Shown here: positions 1 to 64,000 of the stretch, piece after piece
Layout of the letters: each line of letters opens with the position of its first letter
Position numbering within the stretch: the stretch's first letter is position 1
Assembly (NCBI RefSeq): GCF_006345805.1
Contig: NC_043007.1
Span: 17,670,001-17,734,000 of the forward strand
Direction of reading: 5' to 3'
DNA: 64,000 nucleotides
Origin: Octopus sinensis
Taxonomy: Eukaryota
The notes under the pieces: generated by a model
Seen by the model: only the letters and a program-made list of their open reading frames with translations
The model's database searches: none
Told to the model about the DNA's origin: nothing
Translations under genes and position numbers: made by a program

Positions 1-3000
1 ATAGTCACATGTCTTTGCATGCGCTGGCACTTACTTAGACACACTTCTTTACACATGTGGGCATACAGATAGAAACATTTTTGCATATGTAAGCATACAC
101 ATATTTTCACTTCTTTGCATATGTGGGCATACACATAGATGCACTTCTTTGCATATGTAGGCACATACATAGTCACACTTCTTTGCATATGTGGGCATAC
201 ACATAGACACACTCCTTTGCATATGTAGGCACATACATAGTCACACTTCTTTGCATATGTGGGCATACACATAGACACACTTCTTTGCATATGTGGGCAT
301 ACACATAGACACACTTCTTTGCATATGTGGGCATACACATAGACACACTTCTTTGCATATGTAGGCATACACATAGACACACTTCTTTGCATATGTGGGC
401 ATACACATAGACACACTTCTTTGCATATGTGGGCATACACATACACACACTTCTTTGCATATGTGGGCATACACATAGACACACTTCTTTGCATATGTAG
501 GCATACACATAGACACACTTCTTTGCATATGTGGGCATACACATAGACACACTTCTTTGCATATGTGGCATACACATAGACACACTTCTTTGCATATGTG
601 GGCATACACATAGACACACTTCTTTGCATATGTGGGCATACACATAGACACACTTCTTTGCATATGTGGGCATACACATAGACAACACTTCTTTGCATAT
701 GTAGGCATACACATAGACACACTTCTTTGCATATGTAGGCACATACATAGTCACACTTCTTTGCATATGTGGGCATACACATAGACACACTCCTTTGCAT
801 ATGTAGGCACATACATAGTCACACTTCTTTGCATATGTGGGCATACACATAGACACACTTCTTTGCATATGTGGGCATACACATAGACACACTTCTTTGC
901 ATATGTAGACATACACATAGACACACTTCTTTGCATATGTGGGCATACACATAGACACACTTCTTTGCATATGTGGGCATACACATAGACACACTTCTTT
1001 GCATATGTGGGCATACACATAGACACACTTCTTTGCATATGTGGGCATACACATAGACACACTTCTTTGCATATGTGGGCATACACATAGACACACTTCT
1101 TTGCATATGTGGGCATACACATAGACACACTTCTTTGCATATGTAGGCATACACATAGACACACTTCTTTGCATATGTAGGCACATACATAGTCACACTT
1201 CTTTGCATATGTGGGCATACACATAGACACACTCCTTTGCATATGTAGGCACATACATAGTCACACTTCTTTGCATATGTGGGCATACACATAGACACAC
1301 TCCTTTGCATATGTAGGCACATACATAGTCACACTTCTTTGCATATGTGGGCATACACATAGACACACTTCTTTGCATATGTGGGCATACACATAGACAC
1401 ACTTCTTTGCATATGTAGGCATACACATAGACACACTTCTTTGCATATGTAGGCACATACATAGTCACACTTCTTTGCATATGTGGGCATACACATAGAC
1501 ACACTTCTTTGCATATGTAGGCACATACATAGTCACACTTCTTTGCATATGTGGGCATACACATAGACACACTTCTTTGCATATGTAGGCATACACATAC
1601 ACACACTTCTTTGCATATGTGGGCATACACATAGACACACTTCTTTGCATATGTGGGCATACACATAGACACACTTCTTTGCATATGTGGGCATACACAT
1701 AGACACACTTCTTTGCATATGTAGGCATACACATAGACACACTTCTTTGCATATGTAGGCACATACATAGTCACACTTCTTTGCATATGTGGGCATACAC
1801 ATAGACACACTTCTTTGCATATGTGGGCATACACATAGACACACTTCTTTGCATATGTGGGCATACACATAGACACACTTCTTTGCATATGTAGGCACAT
1901 ACATAGTCACACTTCTTTGCATATGTGGGCATACACATAGACACACTTCTTTGCATATGTGGGCATACACATAGACACACTCCTTTGCATATGTAGGCAC
2001 ATACATAGTCACACTTCTTTGCATATGTGGGCATACACATAGACACACTTCTTTGCATATGTGGGCATACACATAGACACACTTCTTTGCATATGTAGGC
2101 ATACACATAGACACACTTCTTTGCATATGTAGGCACATACATAGTCACACTTCTTTGCATATGTGGGCATACACATAGACACACTTCTTTGCATATGTAG
2201 GCACATACATAGTCACACTTCTTTGCATATGTATGCATACACATAGACACACTTCTTTGCATATGTAGGCACATACAGTCACACTTCTTTGCATATGTAG
2301 ACACATACAGTCACACTTCTTTGCATATGTAGGCACATACAGTCACACTTCTTTGCATATGTAGGCACATACAGTCACACTTCTTTGCATATGTAGGCAC
2401 GTACATAGACACACTTCTTTGCATATGTGGGCATACACATAGACACACTTCTTTGCATATGTAGGCACGTACATAGACACACTTCTTTGCATATGTGGGC
2501 ATACACATAGACACACTTCTTTGCATATGTGGGCATACACATAGACACACTTCTTTGCATATGTGGGCATACACATAGACACACTTCTTTGCACATGTGG
2601 GCACACACATAGACACACTTTTTTGCATATGTATGCATACACATAGACACACTTCTTTGCATATGTAGGCACATACAGTCACACTTCTTTGCATATGTAG
2701 ACACATACAGTCACACTTCTTTGCATATGTAGGCACATACAGTCACACTTCTTTGCATATGTAGGCACATACAGTCACACTTCTTTGCATATGTAGGCAC
2801 GTACATAGACACACTTCTTTGCATATGTGGGCATACACATAGACACACTTCTTTGCATATGTGGGCATACACATAGACACACTTCTTTGCACATGTGGGC
2901 ATACACATAGACACACTTCTTTGCATATGTGGGCATACACATAGACACACTTCTTTGCATATGTGGGCATACACATAGACACACTTCTTTGCATATGTAG

Positions 3001-3650
3001 GCATACACATAGACACACTCCTTTGCATATGTAGGCACATACATAGTCACACTTCTTTGCATATGTGGGCATACACATAGACACACTTCTTTGCATATGT
3101 AGGCATACACATAGACACACTTCTTTGCATATGTAGGCACATACATAGTCACACTTCTTTGCATATGTAGGCACATACATAGTCACACTTCTTTGCATAT
3201 GTGGGCATACACATAGACACACTTCTTTGCACATGTGGGCACACACATAGACACACTTTTTTGCATATGTATGCATACACATAGACACACTTCTTTGCAT
3301 ATGTAGGCACATACAGTCACACTTCTTTGCATATGTAGACACATACAGTCACACTTCTTTGCATATGTAGGCACATACAGTCACACTTCTTTGCATATGT
3401 AGGCACATACAGTCACACTTCTTTGCATATGTAGGCACGTACATAGACACACTTCTTTGCATATGTGGGCATACACATAGACACACTTCTTTGCATATGT
3501 GGGCATACACATAGACACACTTTTTTGCATATGTATGCATACAAATAGAGACACTTCTTTGCATATGTGGGCACATACATACATAAATACACACACTTTG
3601 CATATGTACTTACTACTTTTCATGCACAGGCACATGCATACCTACACACC
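1..3650. repeat. Minisatellite array, 34-bp unit (ACACTTCTTTGCATATGTGGGCATACACATAGAC) with 34- and 32-bp variants, roughly 105 units
   Basis: Direct tandem repetition. Variants are ...GTAGGCACATACATAGTC (34 bp) and ...GTAGGCACATACAGTC (32 bp). Units are degenerate at both edges and decay into (TACA)n/(CA)n near 3660-3690. Confidence 0.97.
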
Positions 3651-18189: not shown

Positions 18190-18310
18190 CTGTGTTATCA
18201 CCATCTTCTATCCACGTCGCAACAAGCAAACTCACATTTTCAATGCTTCCAAGAAAACCATTACTGCGGTTGCTTTTTCTGGAGATGGCAAACATCTTGT
18301 TAGTGGAGAG
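18190..18310 (+). CDS. WDR62/MAPKBP1: Internal coding exon of a WDR62/MAPKBP1-family WD40 protein: (G)[40 protein letters not shown]
   Basis: Acceptor ttcttccag|C and donor GAG|gtgagt. The exon is 121 nt (1 nt + 40 codons) with no stops. The translation matches my recollection of the MAPKBP1 N-terminal WD repeat ([40 protein letters not shown]). Confidence 0.93.
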
Positions 18311-22092: not shown

Positions 22093-22569
22093 CCCTTTCA
22101 ATACCAACCCGGCTAAAACTGCCTCTGGCTCTGTAATACAAATGTCATGTTTACATGAGTTTTGAATTTAAATCTTCCACCAAACCTTAGTCACAATTTA
22201 TGTTCCTAACACTAACCAAGCATAGATTGGCATATTTCGGTCATATTACGCGGAGAAAATCCCTGGAGAAGGACATCATGCTCAGAATGGTCAGGGGCAA
22301 GAGAGGAAGAGGCCGACCAAGAACCCATTGGCTTGACACCATCAAGAGTGATACTGGAATGGACATAGCCAATCTGAAAGAAGTGGCCCAGGATAGAACT
22401 GACTGGAGGACACTGATCCAACGAGTAACCGAGAGTTGACTTTGACTGAGCAGATAGATAGAAAGATAACACTAGCTTAATGATAATGAACTTATTTTAT
22501 TAAATTCTTTGTTATATTTAAATTAATTGAAAGAAACACAGAGCATCTCAAAATATGGTAACGAAAGGG
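22093..22569 (+). mobile_element. MITE family A carrying an RTE 3' fragment (22215-22466)
   Basis: TTAA-flanked CCC...GGG element. The cargo translates to KHRLAYFGHITRRKSLEKDIMLRMVRGKRGRGRPRTHWLDTIKSDTG...WRTLIQRVTES* with a (GATA)n tail. 8-bp TSD TAACACTA at 22207-22214 and 22467-22474. Confidence 0.88.
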
Positions 22570-40923: not shown

Positions 40924-41016
40924 AGTGGTCATCAGCCTGCAGTCAGAGTCTGGGATGTTGAAGAGAAGGTTCAAATCGCCCAGTTTCATGGACATAAGTT
41001 TGGCATCAACTGTGTG
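40924..41016 (+). CDS. WDR62/MAPKBP1: Coding exon: [31 protein letters not shown]
   Basis: Acceptor ctgtttctttcag|AGT and donor GTG|gtcagt. 93 nt, phase 0-0, in frame with the previous exon (GE-SGH). Matches the [12 protein letters not shown]...HKYGVACV segment of the family. The preceding intron is 22,613 bp. Confidence 0.93.
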
Positions 41017-47747: not shown

Positions 47748-47864
47748 GCTTACTCTCCAAATATGAAATATATTGTTTCAATGGGAACTCAGCATGATAT
47801 GATTGTAAATGTCTGGAATTGGAAAACCAACAACAAAGTAGCATCAAATAAAATATCTTCCAAG
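47748..47864 (+). CDS. WDR62/MAPKBP1: Coding exon: [39 protein letters not shown]
   Basis: Acceptor atttttcag|GCT and donor AAG|gtaagc. 117 nt, phase 0-0. Matches [26 protein letters not shown]...VASNKVSSR of MAPKBP1. Confidence 0.94.
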
Positions 47865-50076: not shown

Positions 50077-50172
50077 GTCAGTGCCGTAGCATTCTCTTCT
50101 GATGGAAGCTATTTTGTAACGGTTGGAAGTAGACACGTGAAGTTTTGGTACATGGCCAGCAGCAATTCAAAG
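50077..50172 (+). CDS. WDR62/MAPKBP1: Coding exon: [32 protein letters not shown]
   Basis: Acceptor ctttctcacattcag|GTC and donor AAG|gtaagt. 96 nt, phase 0-0. Matches [26 protein letters not shown] of MAPKBP1. Confidence 0.94.
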
Positions 50173-50918: not shown

Positions 50919-52190
50919 TTAAAGGGGTGGTGGTAATGAAGAAAAGAAGTTAAGGCTGCTGTGAGTCTTCGAAAGCATTGTAAAGCAATATATTTCATTT
51001 CCTCCTCAGAAGGGAATATTTTATGATTATGTAAGAAATCTATGTAACCAAGTATAAACACTAAATACATCGACAGATCACAATGGGAGCATGAAGCAAA
51101 GATGGTATGGGTGTAGCTGTGTGATTAAGAAGCTTGCTTCTTAACCATGAGGTCTTGGGTTCAGTCCCACTGCATGGTACCTTCAGCAAGTGTCTTTTAT
51201 TGTAGCTCTGGGCTAATCAAATCCATGTGAGTGGATTTGTAGATGGAAACTGAAAGAAGCCTGTCCTGTGTGTGTATGTGCGTGTGTGTGTGTGTGTGCA
51301 CATGTGCCCTTGTTTAGAGATCATGTGATGTTATAAATGAGCAACATGGTCATACAGGTGAGGTTGTTCATGTCCAGTCTTCCGTGCAAAAGACGTCTGG
51401 TTATGAGACAATATTACCTTGCTTGGAAACAGGTGAGGGTTGATGACAGGAAGGGCCATAGAAAATCTGCCACAATAAATTCTGCCTTACCGATGCTAGC
51501 ATAAAAAAAGTGGATGTTAAAGGATAATAACGATGATGTTTGAGCAGCCATGAGAATATTGAACCTCACTGAATGGATGATATAGGAACAGGAATACAAT
51601 CAATAGGTGATTGGTCAGGATATTGTAACCCTGTTCAGCATACGGAAGTCTTATTGGAAGCTTCAATCTTGACTCATTTCCACTTAGAAGATAGCAATGA
51701 AATTTTCATCGTTACCAACGTTGCCTTACTGGCACCTGTACCGGTGGCATGTGTAAAAAGATTTGAGCGAGGTCATTGCCAGTACCGCCTGACTGGCCCC
51801 CGTGCCGGTGGCACATAAAAACCACCCACTACACTCTTGGAGTGGTTGGCATTCGGAAGGGCATCCAGCTGTAGAAACTCTTCCAAATCAAGATTGGAGC
51901 CTGGTGCAGCCATCTTGTTCGCCAGCCCTCAGTCAAAATCGTCCAACCCATGCTAGCATGGAAAGCGGACGTTAAACGATGACGATTGCAATAATGGAAA
52001 CTTATGATAATATGATATGAAGATGAACTATGGGTTAGATATTAGGGGTGAGAAGGGCTCTATGATGGAATAGTTTGAGAAACACTGGACATGTCGTGTA
52101 TAATAAAATTAATCTATCAGGAATTAGTTGTTTAAACTTTCTCTAAATAAAAACTATTTACTGAAATAAAATGGTTGTTTTGTTTCTTAG

Positions 52191-52211
52191 CCTAGACGAG
52201 CAGGTTCTATG
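52191..52211 (+). CDS. WDR62/MAPKBP1: Candidate 21-nt microexon (PRRAGSM) of the same gene
   Basis: Acceptor ttgttttgtttcttag|CCT and donor ATG|gtaagt. 7 codons, phase 0-0 like its neighbour. Splice-signal evidence only; no transcript evidence. Confidence 0.55.
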
Positions 52212-53194
52212 GTAAGTTCTGACTTCGATTTAGTGTTGTGTAACATATTGCATGTTTGTTGTTATTATTGACGATAGGTATTTTACTGACATGTGTTTGT
52301 GATGTCTGTTGAGCACTTCGTATTTAGAGACCCCAAAACACCGGACTGCTGTACATATTTTCCCTGACTCCTACACTAATGAATTTTTTCTAACTTAATC
52401 TGTTTATCATTTTGTTTTTATTTGTTTCTGTTTTGTTTTTTTTAACCTTTAAACACAACTTCCAGTATTTTAGTTAACATTTTATCACACTCTTCACTTG
52501 TTCGCTGTTCTGACTTTCTGTAGTTTAGTTAACATCTTGTAAATGTACCGACCCCACCCTCACTTGTCTGGTCTTCTGATGTTCCATCATATTTTGATTT
52601 AAATTGATAACATGTTTGGATATTTATTTTTAAAAATTTTATGATATTGGCACAGGTGTGGCTGTGTAGTAAGAAATTTGCTTTTATAATTGTATGGACA
52701 TTTTAGTCCAAATATATTGTATTTTAAATTGTAAGAGGGTTAATACCTCTGTATATGATGTCTGTAAAGAACAATGTTTTAGAGAAGCAGAGGGTCGGCA
52801 GGCACTGTCTTCTCTTATCTTTATCATTTTTGTATCATAATCATTCCCCTCATCAGTGTCTATGTCCAACCCACAAAGCTACCTTATCTATGTGCTGCCT
52901 GTATGGCAAATTTAATGAATAAAAGAAGTTTGCTTTTCAACCACATGGTTCTGAGTTCAGATCCACTGTGTGGCACCTTGGGCAGTTGTCTTCTACTAAA
53001 TCCACTGGCCTACCAAGGCCTTGTAAGTGGATTTGGTTGCTGGAAACTGAAAGAACTCTTTCTCTCTCACATACACATGTATAACTGTGTGTGTCTGTCC
53101 TCTTGGCAGCTGGTACTGGTTTGTTTACATTCCTGTAACTTAGCAGTTTGGCATAAAGAGACCAATAGAATAAGTATCAGATTTAAAAGAAATA

Positions 53195-53618
53195 TCAAGT
53201 GTGATTGTTACCAGTGTCGCCTTACTGGCACTTGTGCTCCGTGTTAGTAGGGTGCTAAGAGCACCATCCAAGCGTGATCGTTGCCAGAGCGGCTTACTGG
53301 CTTCCGTGCAGGTGGCACATAAAAGGCACCATTCAAGCGTGATCGTTACCAGCATCGCCTTACTGGCACCCGTGCTGGTGGCATGTGTAAAAAGATTCGA
53401 GCGAGGTCATTGCCAGTACCGCCTGACTGGCCCCCATGCTGGTGGCACGTAAAAGCACCCACTACACTCACGGAGTGGTTGGCATTAGGAAGGGCATCCA
53501 GCTGTAGAAACACTGCCAGATCAAGATTGGAGCCTGGTGCAGCCATCTGGTTCTCCAGCCCTCAGTCAAATCGTCCAACCCATGCTAGCATGGAAAGCAG
53601 ACATTAAACGATGATGAT
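53195..53618 (+). mobile_element. SINE family 3 with four internal units, joined to a truncated family-2 copy (52915-53190)
   Basis: Tandem units precede the shared tail and (GAT)n. Confidence 0.82.
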
Positions 53619-54379
53619 ATGCTGGGGTTGATGCAATGGGCTAAATCTCTCAAAGCAGTACTCCAGCATGGCCACAGTCCAGTGAGTGAAACAAGAAAAA
53701 GACACAAGATAAAAAATGACAAAACAAAGCAAAACCCCCTTTCAGATGAGTTCTGTTCTGTAGACGTTAAGGGCTTCCACTTGCAGCAGACATACCTGCA
53801 ATAGTAAGAACGATGTTGGTTTGTCACCTCAGTCTATTTCAGTCTCAAATCTCTGAAGTTTCTTTTGATTAAACTCACATCACCCCCCCACTCCCATTTC
53901 ATTATAAGTAACATGAATCTTTACGAGGAGATATTAATAATCTTCTTTCCTACTCATACAATTAAATTCAAGGTTAGTTAATCCATTAGACACCAGCCCA
54001 CCTGAGACTACCTCTCGTCTCCTCTCATACAAAATTTCCTGTTTTCAGGTGTTTTCAATGTCTCAACTTTCCATCATGATTTTGTATATATGAATTTTTT
54101 AATTAAAGTCTTAATGTTAATTAATGTTGCAAATATCGATAACAAAGCATCAAAATATTATTTCACTAATCCATTGCCAGAAATTAAAATCTTTTTTAAT
54201 ATTTTCAAAATTAATTTAAACTCATAGATGCAGGTGTGACTGTGTGGTTGAGGAGATTGCTTCTCAACCATGTGGCTTTGGGTTCAGTCCCACTGTGTGG
54301 CATCTCATGCCACAATCATCTGAATGCTAAGGGTTTAACTGGAGTAATTGCTCGTGTAAGATTTTAAAATTTGGGAACT

Positions 54380-55000
54380 GTTGTTGTCTTGGCAACTCAG
54401 AATGGTAGCGAAGCTAGGTCATAGGTCAGGCATAAGTGATATTCGGGTCATGACCATCTCATCTTTCTCTCAGGTATTCTGTATCAAGAATTGCTTTATC
54501 CATTGTGTCCTTCCCTTTTCAAAATGCTATCCTGTCATTTGAGAGATACTTCACTGCTATGTCTAGGGCCTCCTACTTGGTCTAAGTACCCTCATCAATT
54601 TTCAACATGTCTAATTCTTAACCTACAAAAAAAAAGTTTTGCATGTCTAATTTGTTGTCTTTTTGATGTTATTGTGTGTTTTACTTTGATGTTTTTTTTT
54701 GTGTCTATGTGGTATTTTATTACACTCTACCCATTCCCACCAAATTCTCTTAAATGTTCTAATTTTCTACACTTCCATTGATGAACTGAAAACCTACTTT
54801 ACAATATACATCACTGACCTGGATTGTTAACAATCATTATGTTGTCCAGTCCTCTCCTACTATGCCTAAATTACACACTTATCTTTCTGTTTTCACTATT
54901 TCTATTGCCCACTGCTTGTTTACAATTTATTTTCTCTATAATTTACCACCATACTGTCTTACCACTACTGAGCAATCAACTATAAAGAGAAGCAATACTT
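54380..55000 (-). mobile_element. Possible very old LINE ORF2 remnant
   Basis: Minus-strand fragments AF*KGKDTMD and YDLASL loosely recall the RT motifs QxGFRKGRSTxD and AYDxVxH. Heavily decayed. Confidence 0.3.
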
Positions 55001-55878
55001 TACCAAGTCTTTATTGTCAGCTTTTGCTTGTCTGTATTTATGTATTTGTTTATTATCACAGAATTTCCATGTGGGTTGGTGACTAAACACTCTGGTAGCT
55101 TAGTGTTAGCATATTTAATATATGAAAGTAACTTAGCTCTCCTCCCCACTCTCTCTTTCTCTCTCTCTCTCCTGTATATGCATGTATACATACATAATAC
55201 ACACATGCTTATATGTACAAATGCCGGGTGGTGGAGAAAAAAAAAACGCATTCAGTATATGAAATAGTTTATTTAAATATAGTAAAATGGTCTGTGAATT
55301 CTAATCCTTGTTTCTTAGTTTTATGCAGTCACACACATGCTATATATCTGAAGGAGCCCAGCCACATTTTGCATGTGTGTGACTCTGGAACTGAGTAAAT
55401 TGTGTGTGCATGTGTTTGTACACTACACACAGGGCTTCTGCTGCAAGGCATGCCCTTCATCAGCTGTCAATTGGTGATCATAATGATTTTGAGAACTCCT
55501 TGACCATATCACTCCCTACAGCAGTTCCAAGTAACATTGACATATCCAAAGAATGTTAGGATTTTTTTTTGGCCCATGCTGTAGCATGTTTATCTTCCTC
55601 AGTCATTCATGCAACACCTATTTTGTTTTACCACTCAGTGAAAACATGTTCTTTGCTTTTATTTTTGGTCCTATCTCTACCTGCATTTTCCATATCAATG
55701 ATGAAGCATTTTCTACTTTCCTCTCCAGTTTACAAATCTCTGTTCTGCTATCCTCCCTAAGCCTAATGCCAACCAGGTAGGATACAGTGGATCTAGCCAC
55801 AAACCAAGGCATCCTACCACTACCAGAAGCACTGTACTCTACCATTCTTGTTCCTTATACTATCTCCTATGTCCTTTG

Positions 55879-56111
55879 AGGGCGGCGAGCTGGCAGAAAC
55901 GTTAGCATGCCGTGCGAAATGCGTATCTGTATTTTGTCTGCCGTTACGTTCTGAGTTCAAATTCCACTGAGGTCGACTTTACCTTTCATCCTTTCAAGGA
56001 CAATAAATTAAGTACCAGTTATGCACTGGGGTCGATGTAATTGGCTTAATTTGTTTGTCTGTCCTTGTTTGTCCCCTCTATGTTTAGCCCCTTGTGGGCA
56101 GTAAAGAAACA
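55879..56111 (+). mobile_element. Family-1 SINE, full length, with a 23-bp TSD
   Basis: TATACTATCTCCTATGTCCTTTG at 55856-55878 and 56112-56134. Confidence 0.9.
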
Positions 56112-59100
56112 TATACTATCTCCTATGTCCTTTGTATTTAAACTCTTTCTTTTGTGTGTCTTTTCTATATTGCTTTCTCGTGACACCGTCATCTCATCAC
56201 TCAAAGCAGTTTTTTTTTTTTATCAAGTTAGACATACCACAAGGTCAGGGTGCTGCTCTGATAACAAAATATTGCTTGAGAATAGTACTTTCTTCACCTT
56301 CAGTCATTATAACCGTGTAGAAAACCTGGGTATCAGCTTTCTGTTGTTTTTGCCCTGTGTCTCCTCCTTTCTTGTGGAAAACAACAGATTATAGCCTTGT
56401 ATTAATTCTTCTTGCACGACACTGTGGTATTGTTGTTTTAGTGTATCACTAAGGATATTCAGGAGTTGATAGTGGCACCAGGCATACTCTGCAAGAGATG
56501 ACTAACCTGCTGCCAGAACAGACTCCAGTGATGCATAACCTCTTCACTGATGACAATCAGCAGTGTCCCTCTGGGAGCTGGCTGAACAATATTGGACCAC
56601 AGTCCAATATTGGATTTGTTCAGCTGTCTCACATACATACAGTGGGAAAAAAAAGAAAAGCAGTGTTAGTCACTGATTAGTAATATATTATTTTTTCTTG
56701 CTAGTATGGGAGGTAAATCTAGGCATGTTTCAGTCTCATTCTGATCTCATCAGTAAAGCATAGCATTCACTATACTAATTATTTGGTGGTTGTTATTTAA
56801 CCCCAGGTTAACCCTACCTGAGCAGACCTGTGATGAAAGACATTTCAGCCATTACTGTACTGTCTTCTTTGGCATTGTGTATCTAAGGCTATATGATCCA
56901 GTGTGTTTCTTTGTTTTGATGGTGGTGAGGTGTAATTTGAGGAAGGGTTGGCTGGTATTTCTAGCCAGTAGGTCACCTCTTTACAGGCTCCTTTGTTTTG
57001 TTTTCCTGTAATTTACTTAGATGTGGTTTTATATCCTGAGCAAAAAAATTTCCCTCACATCTGTTCGACACTGCAAAAAACTAAGTTAAATACTGATCTT
57101 ATGGACGTTTTAGGGTTAATGTGAGGATTAACATTTAATTTATTTTGAGATAATAACCCTCCCCGCCACCTTATGGTGTGTGTACATGTGTGTGTTCTGT
57201 TCATTAAATGATGATTAGTCAAGTTCCATCACACTTAACTTCGGTTCACCGATTCCGTGTAATTCTTCTCTATCTTATTTCTTTATAATATATTTTACTT
57301 TATAAGTTTCTGTTCTCCTGGCCCCTAATTCTCAACTCTTACTGCCTCCTTAAATTCTAATCTGTACCAATATCAGAACCAACATATGGCATCCAGTAAC
57401 CTGCTTCACATCATCCTCCCCCCCAACCACCCCACATTCCACCACCCCTATAGCTTTTTATTTGTTGTCGTTTTATTTTTGCTTTCCCCATACAAATATC
57501 ATTTGATGCCTTTTAAATTCCCAGTTGCTGTAATACACACACACCCTGGCATGCACATATTAATTGGGGAGAGAGGGAAACAGTTTTTTCCAAACACATT
57601 ATTAAAAACGCATCTTTGTTTTAATTTCTCATATTTCTTATGAATTTTGTTGTTTTTAGATAGAGTGGCAGTTGCCTGTTGTGATCTCATTGGGGGCAGA
57701 GTCCTTTAAATAGTAATAACCAACTGATAACATTAAGCAGTGGATATAACAATATCCTGAGTGTATAACCCAATTAATGTGGACAATTATGATCTGATTT
57801 CATCATAAGTGCAGGCATGGCTGTGTGATTAAGAAGTTCGCTTCCTAACCTCATGGTTTCAGGTTCAGTCCCACTGTGTGGTACCTTGAACAAGTGTCTT
57901 GTACTGTAGCCCCACACTAACTAAATCCTTGTGAGAAGATTTTGTAGATGGAAACTGTAAAAAGCCTACGATATAATACACCCACACAGCCACATATTTT
58001 TGTTGTATAAGATATGGATTCGGAGAATCCTATGCCTATCTCAGAAAGCTCCTCTAATGGACTCGGCTATCAGACCATACAGTAATCCAACATAGGGAAG
58101 TGTAATGCAGAATGTCTATACGGAAATTATTACTACAGGAAGAAGGCTGCAAAACGGCCATAATCTTCGAATTGTCATACCGCCCAACTTTTTATGGCAT
58201 GTATGTGTGCGTGTGTGCATGCACACATGCGTGTGTGTAATGTTTGTATGTATGAATATGCTTGTACTTCCTTGTCTTGATATTGCATGGTTGTTGTAAA
58301 TGAATGTCATTCATTTCCAATATTCTGTGAAAACATATCTAGTTACGAGGAAATATTGCCTTGCTTGAAAACTTATATGGGTTGATGACATGAAGGGCAT
58401 CTGGCCATAGAAAAATCTGCCTCAGTAAACTCTGTCTGACCCATGTAGGTATGGAAAAGTTGATGTTAAAATGATGATAGAATAACATAATCTAGGATTA
58501 TAAGTGGCTTTTACTATGTTTCAAATAATACTGTTGCAAAGTTATCCATAAAAATATTTCAAGGATACGTAACTTTATCTTTAGTGTGACAGCTGTTATA
58601 GAATATCAAATGATGGCCTACCAAACTTCACTTTTGAAATCGATGCTTATCAGTAATAAATTGAGAATATGTATATATGGATGTGTGGTTAAGGTTTGTG
58701 AGGATGTGGTTTTGGGTTCGATCCTTGGTGTGCTGCACTTTTGGAAAGTGCCTTCTATTATCATATATCAGCCAAAGTTCATGATGGTACCCCATCATTC
58801 ATAAGCATCGACATGGGATAGGTGCAGGCTTGGCTGGTTTCTGAAGAATTTTGCTTTGCAGCCCATGTGGTTTTGGGTTCAGTACCACTGCATGGCACAT
58901 GGTGACTTGGGTAAATTCTTCTTCTGTAGTCTTTAGCTTACCAATACCTCGCGAATGAAATTGGTACGTAAAGTAGCCATTGCAGTTCAGCCCTAGGTCA
59001 GCCCTGATCCAGTAGTAGAAGCAATTGGATCAATGTCTGGATTTGATGATTGTGTAGGTGGTATTGAATATTTCTCAGTTGACTTCATATAACCAATCCT

Positions 59101-60182
59101 GTTATTGCTTCTCTTGCTTTTTTTTTTCGGTTTTTTTTCCTGATTTTTTTTCCCCTATTAATTTGTTTTTCTCACACATCTGTTTCTTTCGAAGTAGCAT
59201 AATTTATTGATGATTCAGTGAACATGACATTTGAATTGCAAGCCATGATGCTTTCGCTTTCAGAAAAAAAGTTTAGAGAGTTTAATCCAGCTATAGTTCT
59301 GGTAATATGAGCTTTCTACAGGTTCCAATAAATCAATAAGCTGATCATGAGAATGGAATCTACCATGTTTGAAATAGTAAAATTTAAAAGAGCTGTAAAC
59401 TTTTCTTAGTGAATCTTCAATATACATTGTGGTTATTTAAATTAGAAGAATTATCAGAAGTAATAATGGGAATAGCTGTTTGCTGTTAGTTCCAATAGTG
59501 TTGCAAAAATGGTAAATATGTTGTTAGCTGTACCTACTTAAGCCACTGCATTCCTTGTTTGTAAAGAATTTAAATGTGTTCTTCAAAATTCTTTAATTTT
59601 AGACAATTTGTTTTATCATGTTTGTCCATTGGAGTGATGAGGACCACCTAGTTATCCTCAAGGATGACTAATGACTTGTGTGGTGATTTTGTGTTATTGG
59701 CATAACAACCCTTCTGAGATACAACAAAGTCTGTTTCAACACATGAGTTCACATCAAGAATCTTACAAAACCAAATGCAAAAACATTTTAACTTGCCCAT
59801 TGAAATGTTAACTAAGTTATTGGAGGTAGTTAGGTAAAAGTTGTCTGTTTGTATGAAGCAAAGCATTTTAATCAGCTTATGGCAGTTACTATCAAAATGC
59901 AAAGAGCCTGAATAAATATTGCAGAGCATCCTTTCAAGTACTGCAACAATTTTGCTACCAATCCACTACCTTAATAATAAATGTAATAAAATTTAGCTTG
60001 AATCCCAATGGCTTGCTAATCTATTGGGATTTCCTTGTGTGAATTCAGATCTTAATCTCATCACTAGTGTTGTATTTTTCAATGGGTTTAAATGCGAAAG
60101 CTATATACTGAAGCTTTAACGTAACTCTTGTTTCTCTTTAGCTTTGCTTCAAGATGGTTTCCACAATTGGTTTGCTATAGTT

Positions 60183-60757
60183 ATCATCATCATCATCGTT
60201 TAACGTCCGCTTTCCATGCTAGCATGGTTTGGACGAATGACTGAGGGCTGGCGAACCAGATGGCTGCACCAGGCTTCAATCTTGATCTGGCAGAGTTTCT
60301 ACAGCTGGATGCCCTTACAAATGCCAACCACTCCGAGAGTGTAGTGGGTGCTGTTACATGCCACCGGCATGGGGCCAGTCAGGCGGTACTGGCAACGACC
60401 TCGCTTGAATCTTTTACATATGCCACCGGCACAGGCGCCAGTAAAGCGATGCTGGTAATGATCACACTCGAATGGTGTTTTTTACGTGCCACCAGCACGG
60501 AGGCCAGATAGCCGCTGTGGCAATGATCACGCTCAGATGGTGCTCTTAATACCCTACTAGCACAGGGCTCGAGTGCCAGTAAGGTGACGCTGGTAACAAT
60601 CGCGCTCGAATGGTGCCTTTTAAGTGCCACTGGCATGGAAGCCGGTAACCGCTCTGTCAATGATCACACTCATATGGTGCTCTTTTCACCCCGCTAGCAT
60701 GGACGCCAGTCATCGAATTTGCCTCAACAGGTCTTTGCAAGCAGAGTTTTCGTGTCC
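60183..60757 (-). mobile_element. Longest SINE family 3 copy (five or more internal units)
   Basis: (CAT)n end at 60183. On the + strand the units begin with GCCACCGGCAY-like motifs. Confidence 0.82.
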
Positions 60758-62067
60758 ATCCTTCTCTGCTAGAGAGCAGCATAGGTAGCGAAATACCTAG
60801 CACTGGAGATGTTTCCCCTGCTTCCATGTTCTTGTCAGGGCAACAATTTTGTTTTTAGAATAGATTTTTCGCTCTCAACATCTAGGAACATGTACAGTGT
60901 GTTTCTTTCCAGTTTTGAAGTAGCAGTGTGAAAAACGATCCTGTAAAACTTGTCGTTTCTCCTTCACACCTCAAACAAATGACAGACGACAAAGAAATAA
61001 AATTTTCACACCAGCCATTGTCCTTTTATAAATAGTTCTGTTCATATCTTTAACAAATTCACTAATCTTTTTTTTCAATCTTAATCTTTCATCTATTGTT
61101 TCTTATAAATATCTTTTTTAATATCACATTGTTCACAATTCTACAGTTACAAAACAGATATTTGTCTTTGGCATAAATACAATGGATAGGAAATTGTGGC
61201 TTAGAAGATGGCAAAGATTTCATTTGTTATTGTGGATACTGGTTGGACTTAGAACAAGGCTGCTAGTTAAGTTAATAAGTAAAATGCGTGAGTTCCATCA
61301 ACCCTTCAGGTATCACAGCTGCCGTTTCTTCTTCATTTAATGTATTGCATTTTAAAGCAGATCAATAGTTTTATTACTTTTCCTAACGTTTCTTATGATC
61401 CGAGGTGTAACAGCTGGAGGTTATCCTTTTCCTTGCTCATTTAGGCTACATATCCTGTGAAGATTTTACTGGTAGGAGACGCCCTTCGTAGGTTTTACAA
61501 TGCACCTCCTGGCTTGAGAATCAAACCTACGTGAGTGCAGTACCCTAACCAGTAGCCCTCCTCCCCTATATGTGTGCATGCACATGCGTTCACACACACA
61601 CACAAAATTATGTACAAACTGGTATGCTTGCTACAATATACAAATTGAATATACAAGTTAAATTAATATCTGATACATAAATTATATCAACAGCTATTAC
61701 TTCAGTAAAAGTAAATAATTGACGATGTGTATAAAGAAAGGTTCAGATGTAAGTTATAGACAATAAAATTATGCATGAAACGATTTGGCATAATTACATA
61801 AAAACTTCTTTTGCAAAGCTATTTTCTAAATTGGTGGGGAAGGTAGTGGGGGGGAGGGCACAATATTGCATTTCTCTGAAAAATTGCTGAGTTGGTGACA
61901 TTGGTCATTTTGCTGTTAACGAATCATACTCTGGCTTCATACTTTCAAAGATGTTTAGGATAAGAGATCATTTCCTTGAAAGGAGGGGAGGGAGGGGGAC
62001 AGAAAATAAACAGGTAAGGGTTAATGACAGGAATAGTATCCAGCTGTAAAGCAATGTTTCAATAATT

Positions 62068-62492
62068 GGATCTTTTCAGTTTGAACGGCAGTTTTTAACA
62101 TAATTTCTAGGTAACTAAAAAATTTTAAACTTCGTACACTGTTAGAATGTGTTTATAAAACATCTTTTTCTCTTGGCTTTATTGAGAAAATTCTATAGTT
62201 TGTAAGATATTTGTTGTTTTTTTTCTTCTTCTATTTCTGCAATTTCAACCAATCACTGACGTCCATTGAGGTAAAAAAACATTCTGTGCCGTATGAATAT
62301 GTCCCTCGTTTAAGAAACAGATTGGGTTTATTTACATTTGTGAAAAAAAAAAATACCCTTCCTCCTACCCCTAACCCTAACTCTAACCCTAAAACAGATT
62401 GAAATGCAATAGATCGATACTAGGGTCATAATTATGGGTGACAATTTCATATGACACCGCTAGAAAAACTGCCGTTCAAACCGAAAAGATCC
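62068..62492. mobile_element. Non-autonomous TIR element (425 bp) with 29-bp TIRs and internal (CCCTAA)4-like repeats
   Basis: GGATCTTTTCAGTTTGAACGGCAGTTTTT...AAAAACTGCCGTTCAAACCGAAAAGATCC, one mismatch. Flanks are CAATAATT and CAATAATA (7/8 match). Confidence 0.88.
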
Positions 62493-63419
62493 CAATAATA
62501 TATTCATTTAACCCATGCTAGCATGGAAAAACAGGTGTATAAACAAAGTAATATCAGTGTATATCTCCTAACTTATATATACAGTTTTATAGCATTAGCC
62601 CCTATAAAAGTTATTATTAAATATTACACAGAAAATACCTTTTGTTTCACACTCACAGCTTCATGTATGTGCATACACACATTGCTTCATGTACATACCC
62701 TGCCACACTATCCATTCATAGTTACATTCTCTTACGTGTATACAGAAAATATCTCCCAAGATGTCAGATGTTTTCAGAGAACATTGTTATTTCAAAAATA
62801 TTTATAGTCTAAGCAAGTGACAACTACTATTTGAATAATTTGTTCATATATGTTGGGCTTACCTTGAGGCATGTGTGTATATAGATTTACTGGCAACACA
62901 TACATTTACTGGCAACAGTCCCACCATGGGCCACTATTATTAGTTTGGTTGTTTAATGTCACATCGTTACCTTGTAAGGTATATTAGTATAGTGAGGTGT
63001 GTGTGTTGTGTGTGCTTGGTGAGAGCAGCTGATATGTCTAAGTTATGTATTTCAATGGGGGATTACACTTTTCTTAGGTGATTTATTGTTTGTTCCTCTC
63101 CCAAGGGATGGTTATTGATGGAGACCAAGGCAAGGAGGAGGGAGAAGAGAGAGAGAGAGACAGGCCAACAGACAGATGTATTAGGAAGATGGAGACAGAT
63201 ATAGATATAGCATGAAGGGTTTTTCATTTTCTCACTTAAGGGAGACACTAAGAATAGACTAGTTCTAATGTTGGTAACTGTTATTAACTTGTAAATACCT
63301 ACAAGTTACTTCAACCCTTTGAAACCCAGAGCTGAAGTTATAAACCTTCAGGATTTCATTTTTACACCGAAACTGACTTGGTTCAAACCTCTTCCTTCAC
63401 TTTCTCTTTATCTTATAGT

Positions 63420-63808
63420 CTCTTTTACTCTTTTGATTGTTTCAGTCATTTGACTGTGACCATGCTGGAGCACCGCCTTTAGTCGAGCAAATCGACCCCA
63501 GAGCTTATTTTTTGTAAGCCTAGTACTTATTCTATTGTTCTCTTTTGCCAAACCGCCAAGTTACGGGGACGTAAACACACCAGCATCGGTTGTCAAGCGA
63601 TGAGGGGGGGGGCAAACACAGACACACATGCACACACATGCATATATACGATGGGCTTCTTTCAGTTTCCGTCTACCAAATCCACTCACAAAGCTTTGGT
63701 CGGCCCAAGGCTATAGTAGATGACACTTGCCTAAGGTGTCACGTAGTGGGACTGAACCCAGAACCATGTGGTTGGTAAGCATGCTACTTACCACACAGCC
63801 ACTCCTGC
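63420..63808 (-). mobile_element. SINE family 2, full length
   Basis: Collinear with 6612-7020. Confidence 0.85.
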
Positions 63809-64000
63809 ATCTTTAACTTTTAGTTAACAATAGGATCTATGTTGATTTTAGTACAATCACCAATGGCTCCAATGTACAGATTTCAATTGAGACTTAACAT
63901 GAGTTTATATGAAATTTGTTGACCACATAAACAAATACTTGAATGCACAGTAGTTTTATGCTCTATAATGTACTCACAGTTTGACATACTTTATAGATGA

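What the first reader, a model, noticed from the sequence alone, without database searches (positions are those of the whole stretch)
52171..52400. Candidate regulated microexon (PRRAGSM) in WDR62/MAPKBP1 with downstream Rbfox- and QKI-type motifs
Seen: a 21-nt frame-preserving segment with a strong acceptor and a consensus G|GTAAGT donor. TGCATG lies at 52249-52254, ACTAAT at 52375-52380 and CTAAC at 52390-52394. About 400 bp of flanking intron has no recognisable repeats, in a window where such gaps are uncommon. Established: downstream UGCAUG (Rbfox) and ACUAAY (QKI/How) typically promote inclusion, and microexons are enriched in neural transcripts. Inference: a tissue-specific insertion of a basic, Ser-containing peptide (R-x-x-S) right after the WD repeat ending KFWY...SK, in a gene family tied to neural progenitor spindles and JNK scaffolding. 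Alternative AGs at 52195, 52200 and 52203 would shift the frame.
Basis: partly seen in the sequence, partly recalled or inferred. Interest (0 to 1): 0.72.

Follow-up and report, generated by a model that had tools for sequence, protein, structure and literature searches.

The report
Real cephalopod microexon in WDR62/MAPKBP1 gene
The 21-base segment is a genuine, optionally included mini-exon of the octopus WDR62/MAPKBP1 gene; it is shared by octopuses, argonauts and cuttlefish but absent from other animals, and what controls it and what it does remain untested.

Summary
Bases 52191-52211 (CCTAGACGAGCAGGTTCTATG, PRRAGSM) lie between an AG acceptor and a GTAAGT donor, in frame with the upstream WDR62/MAPKBP1 exon that ends at 50172.

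- **Real exon.** Five deposited Octopus vulgaris proteins and the O. sinensis protein read ...[30 protein letters not shown]...
- **Alternative.** One O. vulgaris isoform and both O. bimaculoides models skip it.
- **Conserved in coleoids.** Argonauta hians has PKRPGSM at the same junction. In Sepia esculenta, one assembled transcript carries a clean 21-nt insert (QKRVGSS) and three lack it.
- **Cephalopod-specific as far as sampled.** No non-cephalopod orthologue among about 300 carries this 7-residue insert. The conserved core is [KR]-R-x-G-S.
- **Location.** An AlphaFold model places the insert in a low-confidence loop after the KFWY strand of the first beta-propeller.

What is not shown:
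- Tissue specificity and Rbfox or QKI control. The TGCATG (+38) and ACTAAT-N10-TAAC (+164) motifs exist, but each has roughly a 3-4% chance expectation, and their conservation could not be checked.
- The upstream UGC signature of Srrm/eMIC microexons is absent.
- The repeat-free flank is real but not unusual for this window.

This is an ordinary kind of feature, already present in annotations but, in the literature I could search, not described.

The parts
18190..18310 (+). WDR62/MAPKBP1 coding exon (x)[40 protein letters not shown]; starts with 1 nt of a split codon, ends in phase 0
   Evidence: tblastn with O. vulgaris protein P0002, 100% identity; boundaries ttccAG| and GAG|GTGAGT
40924..41016 (+). 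coding exon [31 protein letters not shown]
   Evidence: acceptor tttcAG|, donor GTG|GTCAGT
47748..47864 (+). coding exon [39 protein letters not shown]
   Evidence: donor AAG|GTAAGC
50077..50172 (+). coding exon [32 protein letters not shown], immediately upstream of the microexon; ends in phase 0
   Evidence: donor AAG|GTAAGT (9/9 consensus)
52128..52190 (+). 3' splice-site region of the microexon: 61-nt AG-free zone, G-interrupted pyrimidine tract (60% pyrimidine at -23..-4, the weakest of the five exons), TAG acceptor, no TGC within 120 nt upstream
52191..52211 (+). 21-nt alternative microexon, PRRAGSM
   Evidence: Present in O. vulgaris CAI9729696/97/98/700/701 and O. sinensis XP_036363024; skipped in CAI9729699 and in O. 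bimaculoides XP_014789139 and XP_052827959. Homologous 21-nt insert in a Sepia esculenta transcript. Only place in the window that encodes PRRAGSM.
52212..52217 (+). 5' splice site GTAAGT
   Evidence: 8/9 match including exon positions
52249..52254 (+). TGCATG (Rbfox-type hexamer), +38 from the donor, embedded in GU/UGU-rich sequence
   Evidence: chance P about 0.04 within 100 nt; function and conservation untested
52375..52394 (+). ACTAAT-N10-TAAC, fits the bipartite QKI/How response element; equally branch-point-like (CTAAC)
   Evidence: chance P about 0.03 within 200 nt; function untested
52395..52465 (+). long T-rich pyrimidine tract ending in ttccAG, directly after the CTAAC: a 3'-splice-site-like arrangement. 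The sequence after it hits a stop within 4 codons in the microexon's frame.
   Evidence: read; not tested further
52218..64000 (+). downstream intron; the next coding exon (INETVPLMGRSGILGE...) is not in the window, so this intron is longer than 11.8 kb
   Evidence: no tblastn hit for P0002 residues beyond 208

Best explanation
Bases 52191-52211 are a genuine 21-nt alternative cassette microexon of the single cephalopod orthologue of WDR62/MAPKBP1.

Shown:
- Transcripts and proteins exist both with and without it in Octopus vulgaris and in Sepia esculenta.
- It has the same position, length and phase in Octopus, Argonauta and Sepia, so it predates the octopus-cuttlefish split.
- It is absent from every non-cephalopod orthologue sampled.
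- It adds 7 residues with a conserved [KR]-R-x-G-S core.

Inferred:
- The insert lengthens the flexible loop that follows the KFWY strand (strand C of the fourth blade, by my count) of the first beta-propeller, on the rim of the domain. There it would add two positive charges and a possible basophilic-kinase Ser, tuning a protein or microtubule contact rather than the fold.
- The exon is too short for exon definition and has the weakest acceptor of the five exons in the window, next to a near-consensus donor. Inclusion therefore probably depends on intronic enhancers. The UGCAUG at +38 in a GU-rich stretch is the best candidate (Rbfox-type activation from downstream), and the ACUAAU-N10-UAAC element is a weaker second candidate.
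For: - Exon and frame.
- Deposited proteins with the insert: O. vulgaris P0002, P0122-P0125; O. sinensis P0127; Argonauta P0005 (PKRPGSM). Without it: O. vulgaris P0121; O. bimaculoides P0003 and P0126.
- Sepia esculenta transcript assemblies: L001 has a clean 21-nt insert CAGAAACGTGTGGGTTCTTCG between ...GTAAAG and ATAAATGAA...; L002, L003 and L004 lack it. The contigs are otherwise 99.7-99.9% identical. The species is assigned through SRR19578103.
- Linker length between FW[YF] and PLxGR in 311 orthologues: 12-13 residues is typical, and 19 occurs only in cephalopod plus-forms.
- AlphaFold2 model: mean pLDDT 85, pTM 0.86. Residues 199-210 have pLDDT below 50 and lie between strands 190-195 and 217-220.
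- Weak acceptor, strong donor, 61-nt AG-free zone.
- Motifs present and somewhat rarer than chance.
- An Rbfox homologue has been reported in the O. vulgaris transcriptome (PMC5736919).
Against: - No tissue-resolved data, so 'regulated' rests only on different samples yielding different forms.
- The O. bimaculoides skipping models could be aligner misses of a 21-nt exon.
- Single TGCATG and QRE matches have about 3-4% chance expectation each and were picked post hoc. Their conservation could not be examined.
- The CTAAC followed by a long pyrimidine tract and an AG may simply be a pseudo 3' splice site.
- The peptide is less conserved than its flanks: 3/7 identical residues Octopus versus Sepia and 13/21 nt (counted by hand from the two sequences), against 78-85% nt in the flanking exons.
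- Phosphorylation and any binding effect are pure inference. R-x-x-S is a minimal motif.
Confidence: 0.85

Rival explanations
1. It belongs to the Srrm (eMIC-domain) neural microexon programme. Inclusion would be switched on in neurons by an Srrm2/3/4-type protein acting on the 3' splice-site region, and the downstream Rbfox and QKI motifs would be irrelevant.
For: The size (21 nt), frame preservation, location in a loop of a scaffold protein, weak acceptor and long AG-free zone match the class described for flies and mammals (PMC8797185).
Against: The hallmark UGC close to the 3' splice site is missing: there is no TGC in the 120 nt upstream, although the background density is 14/kb. The pyrimidine tract is UG-interrupted rather than UCUC-rich. 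No expression data are available.
Confidence: 0.2
2. The exon is essentially constitutive. The forms without it would be annotation or assembly artefacts, or low-level splicing noise, so there is nothing regulated.
For: Microexons are often missed by spliced aligners, which could explain the two O. bimaculoides models. Five of six O. vulgaris models include it.
Against: Three independent de novo Sepia esculenta assemblies from different runs join the flanking exons directly, and a fourth from the same project as one of them includes the 21 nt. De novo contigs cannot lose an exon through alignment error. One O. vulgaris model also skips it.
Confidence: 0.07
3. The exon is real and alternative, but the TGCATG and ACTAAT...CTAAC matches are coincidental. 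Control would lie elsewhere, for example GU-rich CELF-type elements, exon-internal signals or RNA structure. The CTAAC plus pyrimidine tract plus AG at 52390-52465 would be a decoy 3' splice site.
For: Each motif is a single occurrence with a chance probability of a few percent and was chosen post hoc. GU/UGU-rich runs flank the hexamer, and a 3'-splice-site-like arrangement follows the CTAAC.
Against: The position of UGCAUG, +38 downstream of a weak cassette exon, is the classical activating location (established knowledge). The bipartite spacing fits the QKI element exactly.
Confidence: 0.45

Closest known systems
Neural microexons of vertebrates and insects (3-27 nt cassette exons; Srrm/eMIC-dependent programme; PMC8797185)
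   Same: [quoted passage not shown]
   Different: No UGC near the acceptor. Neural enrichment is unknown. The exon is restricted to cephalopods and has no counterpart in the vertebrate or insect orthologues sampled.
Rbfox-activated cassette exons ((U)GCAUG in the downstream intron)
   Same: UGCAUG 38 nt downstream of the 5' splice site of a weak alternative exon.
   Different: A single copy; conservation and Rbfox dependence are untested.
QKI/How-regulated exons (ACUAAY-N1-20-UAAY)
   Same: An exact bipartite match, ACUAAU-N10-UAAC, 164 nt downstream.
   Different: The same letters are branch-point consensus and are followed by a pyrimidine tract and an AG, so they may belong to a pseudo 3' splice site. 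Untested.
[quoted passage not shown]
   Same: A clade-specific short exon arising in a deeply conserved gene. Other lineages show isoform length variants at the same exon junction (fish MAPKBP1 isoforms).
   Different: MAPKBP1 and WDR62 are not mentioned in that text. The fish variants are database predictions only.

Membership tests
MABP1/WDR62 (MAPKBP1/WDR62) protein family | First WD40 propeller, Pfam PF24780, above the gathering score | tested here: met
   Sepia orthologue, residues 45-376: 567 bits against a cut-off of 496. Window exons are 100% identical to residues 60-208 of O. vulgaris 'MAPKBP1-like'.
MABP1/WDR62 (MAPKBP1/WDR62) protein family | Second WD40 propeller, Pfam PF24782 | tested here: met
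   559 bits against a cut-off of 290 in the Sepia orthologue. This part of the gene lies outside the window.
Microexon (alternative cassette exon of 27 nt or less) | Length 3-27 nt, a multiple of 3, canonical AG...GT | tested here: met
   21 nt, AG at 52189-90, GTAAGT at 52212-17
Microexon (alternative cassette exon of 27 nt or less) | Both inclusion and skipping products exist | tested here: met
   O. vulgaris isoforms with and without it; Sepia esculenta contig L001 with it, and L002-L004 without
Microexon (alternative cassette exon of 27 nt or less) | Evolutionary conservation of position, length and phase | tested here: met
   Octopus PRRAGSM, Argonauta PKRPGSM, Sepia QKRVGSS at the same junction. 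Nautilus was not available.
Microexon (alternative cassette exon of 27 nt or less) | Neural-enriched inclusion | not testable with these tools
   No read-level data. Tissue metadata for SRR8281672 and SRR8281678 were not found. SRR19578103 appears in studies of S. esculenta larvae/juveniles, and its contig gives the skipping form.
Srrm/eMIC-dependent microexons | UGC motif close to the 3' splice site | tested here: not met
   No TGC in the 120 nt upstream
Srrm/eMIC-dependent microexons | Weak 3' splice site with a long AG exclusion zone | tested here: met
   61-nt AG-free zone, against 31-32 nt for three of the four neighbouring exons (82 for the fourth); the lowest pyrimidine content of the five acceptors
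Rbfox-activated exons | (U)GCAUG within about 300 nt downstream | tested here: met
   TGCATG at 52249 (+38); chance P = 0.044 per 100 nt
Rbfox-activated exons | Motif conserved in orthologous introns; inclusion depends on Rbfox | not testable with these tools
No cephalopod genome collection is on hand.
QKI/How target exons | Bipartite ACUAAY-N1-20-UAAY near the regulated exon | tested here: met
   52375-52394; 8 such matches in 60 kb, P = 0.026 per 200 nt
QKI/How target exons | Conservation and dependence on QKI | not testable with these tools
   Same limitation as for Rbfox

The most novel reading that the evidence does not exclude
The exon is part of a coleoid-specific neural microexon set that arose independently of the vertebrate and insect programmes. 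In neurons it would switch the single WDR62/MAPKBP1 scaffold to a form carrying a phosphorylatable basic loop ([KR]RxGS) on its first propeller, changing spindle, centrosome or JNK-scaffold interactions. Inclusion would be driven by a conserved downstream Rbfox site rather than by the Srrm UGC code.
Probability: 0.2. Interest if true: 0.55.

Novelty: new member of a known kind. Interest (0 to 1): 0.4.

Why it matters
WDR62 and MAPKBP1 are centrosome and spindle scaffolds, and WDR62 mutations cause human primary microcephaly (PMC7517699). Cephalopods evolved large brains independently. A microexon that is cephalopod-specific, conserved since before the octopus-cuttlefish split, and inserted in the one orthologue of these genes is a small, concrete and testable example of lineage-specific isoform innovation in a brain-growth gene.

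It is also a useful positive control for the scan: a 21-nt exon predicted from raw sequence alone proved to be real. The practical value is limited, however. The exon is already in public gene models, and its kind (a short in-frame loop insertion in a scaffold protein) is well known.

Tried and rejected
1. **Constitutive-segment idea.** I considered that PRRAGSM might be the conserved 'PLxGRSG' segment, that is, a constitutive exon. Rejected: the orthologues continue with INETVPLMGRSG after the insert.
2. **Genomic DNA of another cephalopod, for intron-motif conservation.** The Argonauta hians gene was located, but no DNA was returned because the gene range is 111.5 kb. Octopus genes are longer still. 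No other accessible collection holds cephalopod genomes.
3. **Two more protein searches at fragment lengths** (127-404 aa and 330-1050 aa). They found no further cephalopod sequences, so neither squid nor Nautilus was sampled.
4. **Tissue of the Sepia samples via the literature.** Only SRR19578103 could be placed, in studies of S. esculenta larvae/juveniles. SRR8281672, SRR8281678 and SRR25158156 were not found.
5. **Srrm/eMIC cis-code.** UGC near the acceptor is absent.
6. **'Repeat-free flank is unusual'.** Not supported.
7. **Solved structure of the propellers.** None in the PDB by sequence.
8. **Literature on this exon.** Nothing found for microexon with cephalopod or octopus, or for MAPKBP1 with microexon.

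Method notes:
- All exon calls were afterwards confirmed with the database protein P0002.

Full report
**1. The observation**

The window is AT-rich (38% GC), repeat-rich animal DNA. At the stated place the sequence reads ...aaatggttgttttgtttcttAG|CCTAGACGAGCAGGTTCTATG|GTAAGTtctgac....
- The 21 nt at 52191-52211 translate to PRRAGSM.
- The upstream coding exon is 50077-50172 ([32 protein letters not shown]). It ends on a codon boundary at AAG|GTAAGT, so the 21 nt stay in frame.
- The AGs ending at 52195, 52200 and 52203 exist. They lie inside the exon, downstream of the first AG that follows a 61-nt AG-free zone.

**2. The gene**

- A search with the 143 residues they encode returned Octopus vulgaris 'mitogen-activated protein kinase-binding protein 1-like' at 100% identity. 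It also returned O. bimaculoides 'WDR62-like' (99%), Argonauta hians (96%), a cuttlefish transcript cluster (91%), and orthologues from molluscs, arthropods, echinoderms, lancelets and vertebrates.
- tblastn with the O. vulgaris protein fixed the exons at 18190-18310, 40924-41016, 47748-47864 and 50077-50172.
- The next exon (INETVPLMGRSGILGE...) is not in the window, so the intron after the microexon exceeds 11.8 kb.
- The cuttlefish orthologue passes both family-specific Pfam models, PF24780 and PF24782.

**3. Is the 21-nt segment an exon? Yes.** After ...[11 protein letters not shown]:

| Species | Records | Form |
|---|---|---|
| O. vulgaris | CAI9729696, CAI9729697, CAI9729698, CAI9729700, CAI9729701 | PRRAGSM, then INETVPLMGRSG |
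| O. vulgaris | CAI9729699 | straight to INETVPL (skipped) |
| O. sinensis | XP_036363024 | includes PRRAGSM |
| O. bimaculoides | XP_014789139, XP_052827959 | skipped |
| Argonauta hians | GAB1607476 | PKRPGSM at the same point |

PRRAGSM is encoded only once in the window. This matters because the bare splice pattern is not distinctive: eight AG-N(9-51, in frame, stop-free)-GTRAGT segments occur in the 13.8 kb after exon D.

**4. Independent transcript evidence from a decapodiform**

Four de novo assembled contigs from public RNA-seq runs encode the cuttlefish orthologue.
- L001 (SRR8281678) contains CAGAAACGTGTGGGTTCTTCG (QKRVGSS) between ...AACGTAAAG and ATAAATGAA...
- L002 (SRR19578103), L003 (SRR8281672) and L004 (SRR25158156) join the two flanks directly.
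- Apart from alternative segments, the contigs are 99.7-99.9% identical, so they come from one species.
- SRR19578103 appears in several papers on Sepia esculenta larvae and juveniles.
- De novo contigs cannot lose an exon through alignment failure, so skipping is real. SRR8281672 and SRR8281678 carry near-adjacent run numbers, so probably come from one project, yet they gave opposite forms.

The exon is therefore alternative in both major coleoid lineages. By general knowledge, not tested here, those lineages separated roughly 250-300 million years ago.

**5. Distribution and conservation**

- In 311 orthologues, the linker between FW[YF] and PLxGR is usually 12-13 residues. The 19-residue class consists only of cephalopod plus-forms.
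- None of the non-cephalopod molluscs carries the insert, including several individually listed oyster isoforms.
- Octopus and Sepia share 13/21 nt and 3/7 residues (R, G, S), plus a K/R exchange, counted by hand from the sequences. The flanking exons are 78-85% identical in nt and 83-97% in residues.
- The conserved core is [KR]-R-x-G-S. The peptide is thus freer to change than the propeller, but its length, phase, two basic residues and the Gly-Ser are kept.

**6. Where it sits in the protein**

- No solved structure of this family exists by sequence search.
- An AlphaFold2 model of residues 1-760 of the Sepia plus-form (42-sequence alignment; mean pLDDT 85, pTM 0.86) shows two beta-propellers.
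- Residues 199-210, which contain the insert (203-209), have pLDDT below 50. They lie between strand 190-195 (HVKFWY) and strand 217-220.
- Counting the WD-like strand-C motifs (VRVWDV, VNVWNW, VKFWY) puts the insert in the C-to-D loop of the fourth blade. In textbook WD40 topology that loop lies on the outer rim of the bottom face (inference).
- It therefore lengthens a surface loop rather than disturbing the fold.

**7. How inclusion may be controlled**

- Among the five exons in the window, the microexon has the poorest pyrimidine tract (60% against 70-85%) and a TAG acceptor. Its AG-free zone is twice as long as those of three of the four neighbouring exons (the fourth has 82 nt), and its donor is near-consensus.
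- This is the usual picture for a short exon that needs help.
- The Srrm/eMIC signature described for fly and mammalian neural microexons includes UGC close to the acceptor (PMC8797185). Here there is no TGC in the 120 nt upstream.
- Downstream, TGCATG at +38 sits in GU-rich sequence. ACTAAT-N10-TAAC at +164 fits the bipartite QKI element.
- Against the window's own background these have chance probabilities of 0.044 (per 100 nt) and 0.026 (per 200 nt). That is interesting but not significant after post hoc choice.
- The CTAAC is followed by a long T-rich tract and ttccAG at 52460-52465, so it may belong to a pseudo 3' splice site instead.
- An Rbfox homologue has been reported in O. vulgaris transcripts (PMC5736919).
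- I could not test conservation of the motifs.

**8. What remains unknown**

- Tissue specificity, regulators and function.
- The 'unusually repeat-free' argument does not hold. The 920-nt unique stretch (51987-52906) is one of 46 such stretches, and 61% of the window has no intra-window repeat.

**9. Novelty**

- The exon is already in deposited gene models, so it is not a discovery in the database sense.
- I found no paper describing it, or any microexon in MAPKBP1/WDR62, or cephalopod microexons in general. A 2026 preprint on tissue-specific splicing includes O. bimaculoides but does not mention these genes in its text.
- It is a new, well-supported member of a known kind: a lineage-restricted, conserved, alternatively spliced microexon in a loop of a scaffold protein.

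Noticed in passing
window 36-3581: A 34-bp satellite (consensus TAGACACACTTCTTTGCATATGTGGGCATACACA), about 105 tandem copies, 91% matches. It produces long spurious minus-strand ORFs (LCMCLHMQRSV...).
   Followed up: partly
window 51750-51986 and from about 52907: Dispersed repeats with 7-16 further copies inside the window bracket the unique 920-nt island that holds the microexon. The upstream one has the tRNA-derived look of a SINE (...ggcacctgtaccggtggcatgt...).
   Followed up: partly
window 52390-52465: CTAAC, then a roughly 55-nt T-rich pyrimidine tract, then ttccAG: a strong-looking 3' splice-site arrangement 250 nt downstream of the microexon. The sequence after it reaches a stop within four codons in the microexon's frame, so if used it would be a poison or decoy exon.
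   Followed up: no
proteins P0285, P0339, P0345, P0349 (fish MAPKBP1 isoforms): The same exon junction shows length variants in other animals. Pygocentrus has ...SSK-ISNKT-VNATV (+5 residues). Three Hippocampus comes isoforms differ by 0, 3 or 6 residues there. This suggests the loop and its intron are a recurrent site of splice variation. These are database predictions only.
   Followed up: partly
loci L001-L003 (Sepia esculenta transcripts): Beyond the microexon, the contigs differ by at least two other in-frame segments (around L001 3005-3077 and 4035-4090, against L002 4322-4491), so the gene has several alternative regions.
   Followed up: no
window 22191-22436 (+): An 82-residue open frame (...GKRGRGRPRTHWLDTIKSDTGMDIANLKEVAQDRTDWRTLIQRV...) resembles the C-terminal tail of retrotransposon ORFs but has no Pfam match.
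   Followed up: partly
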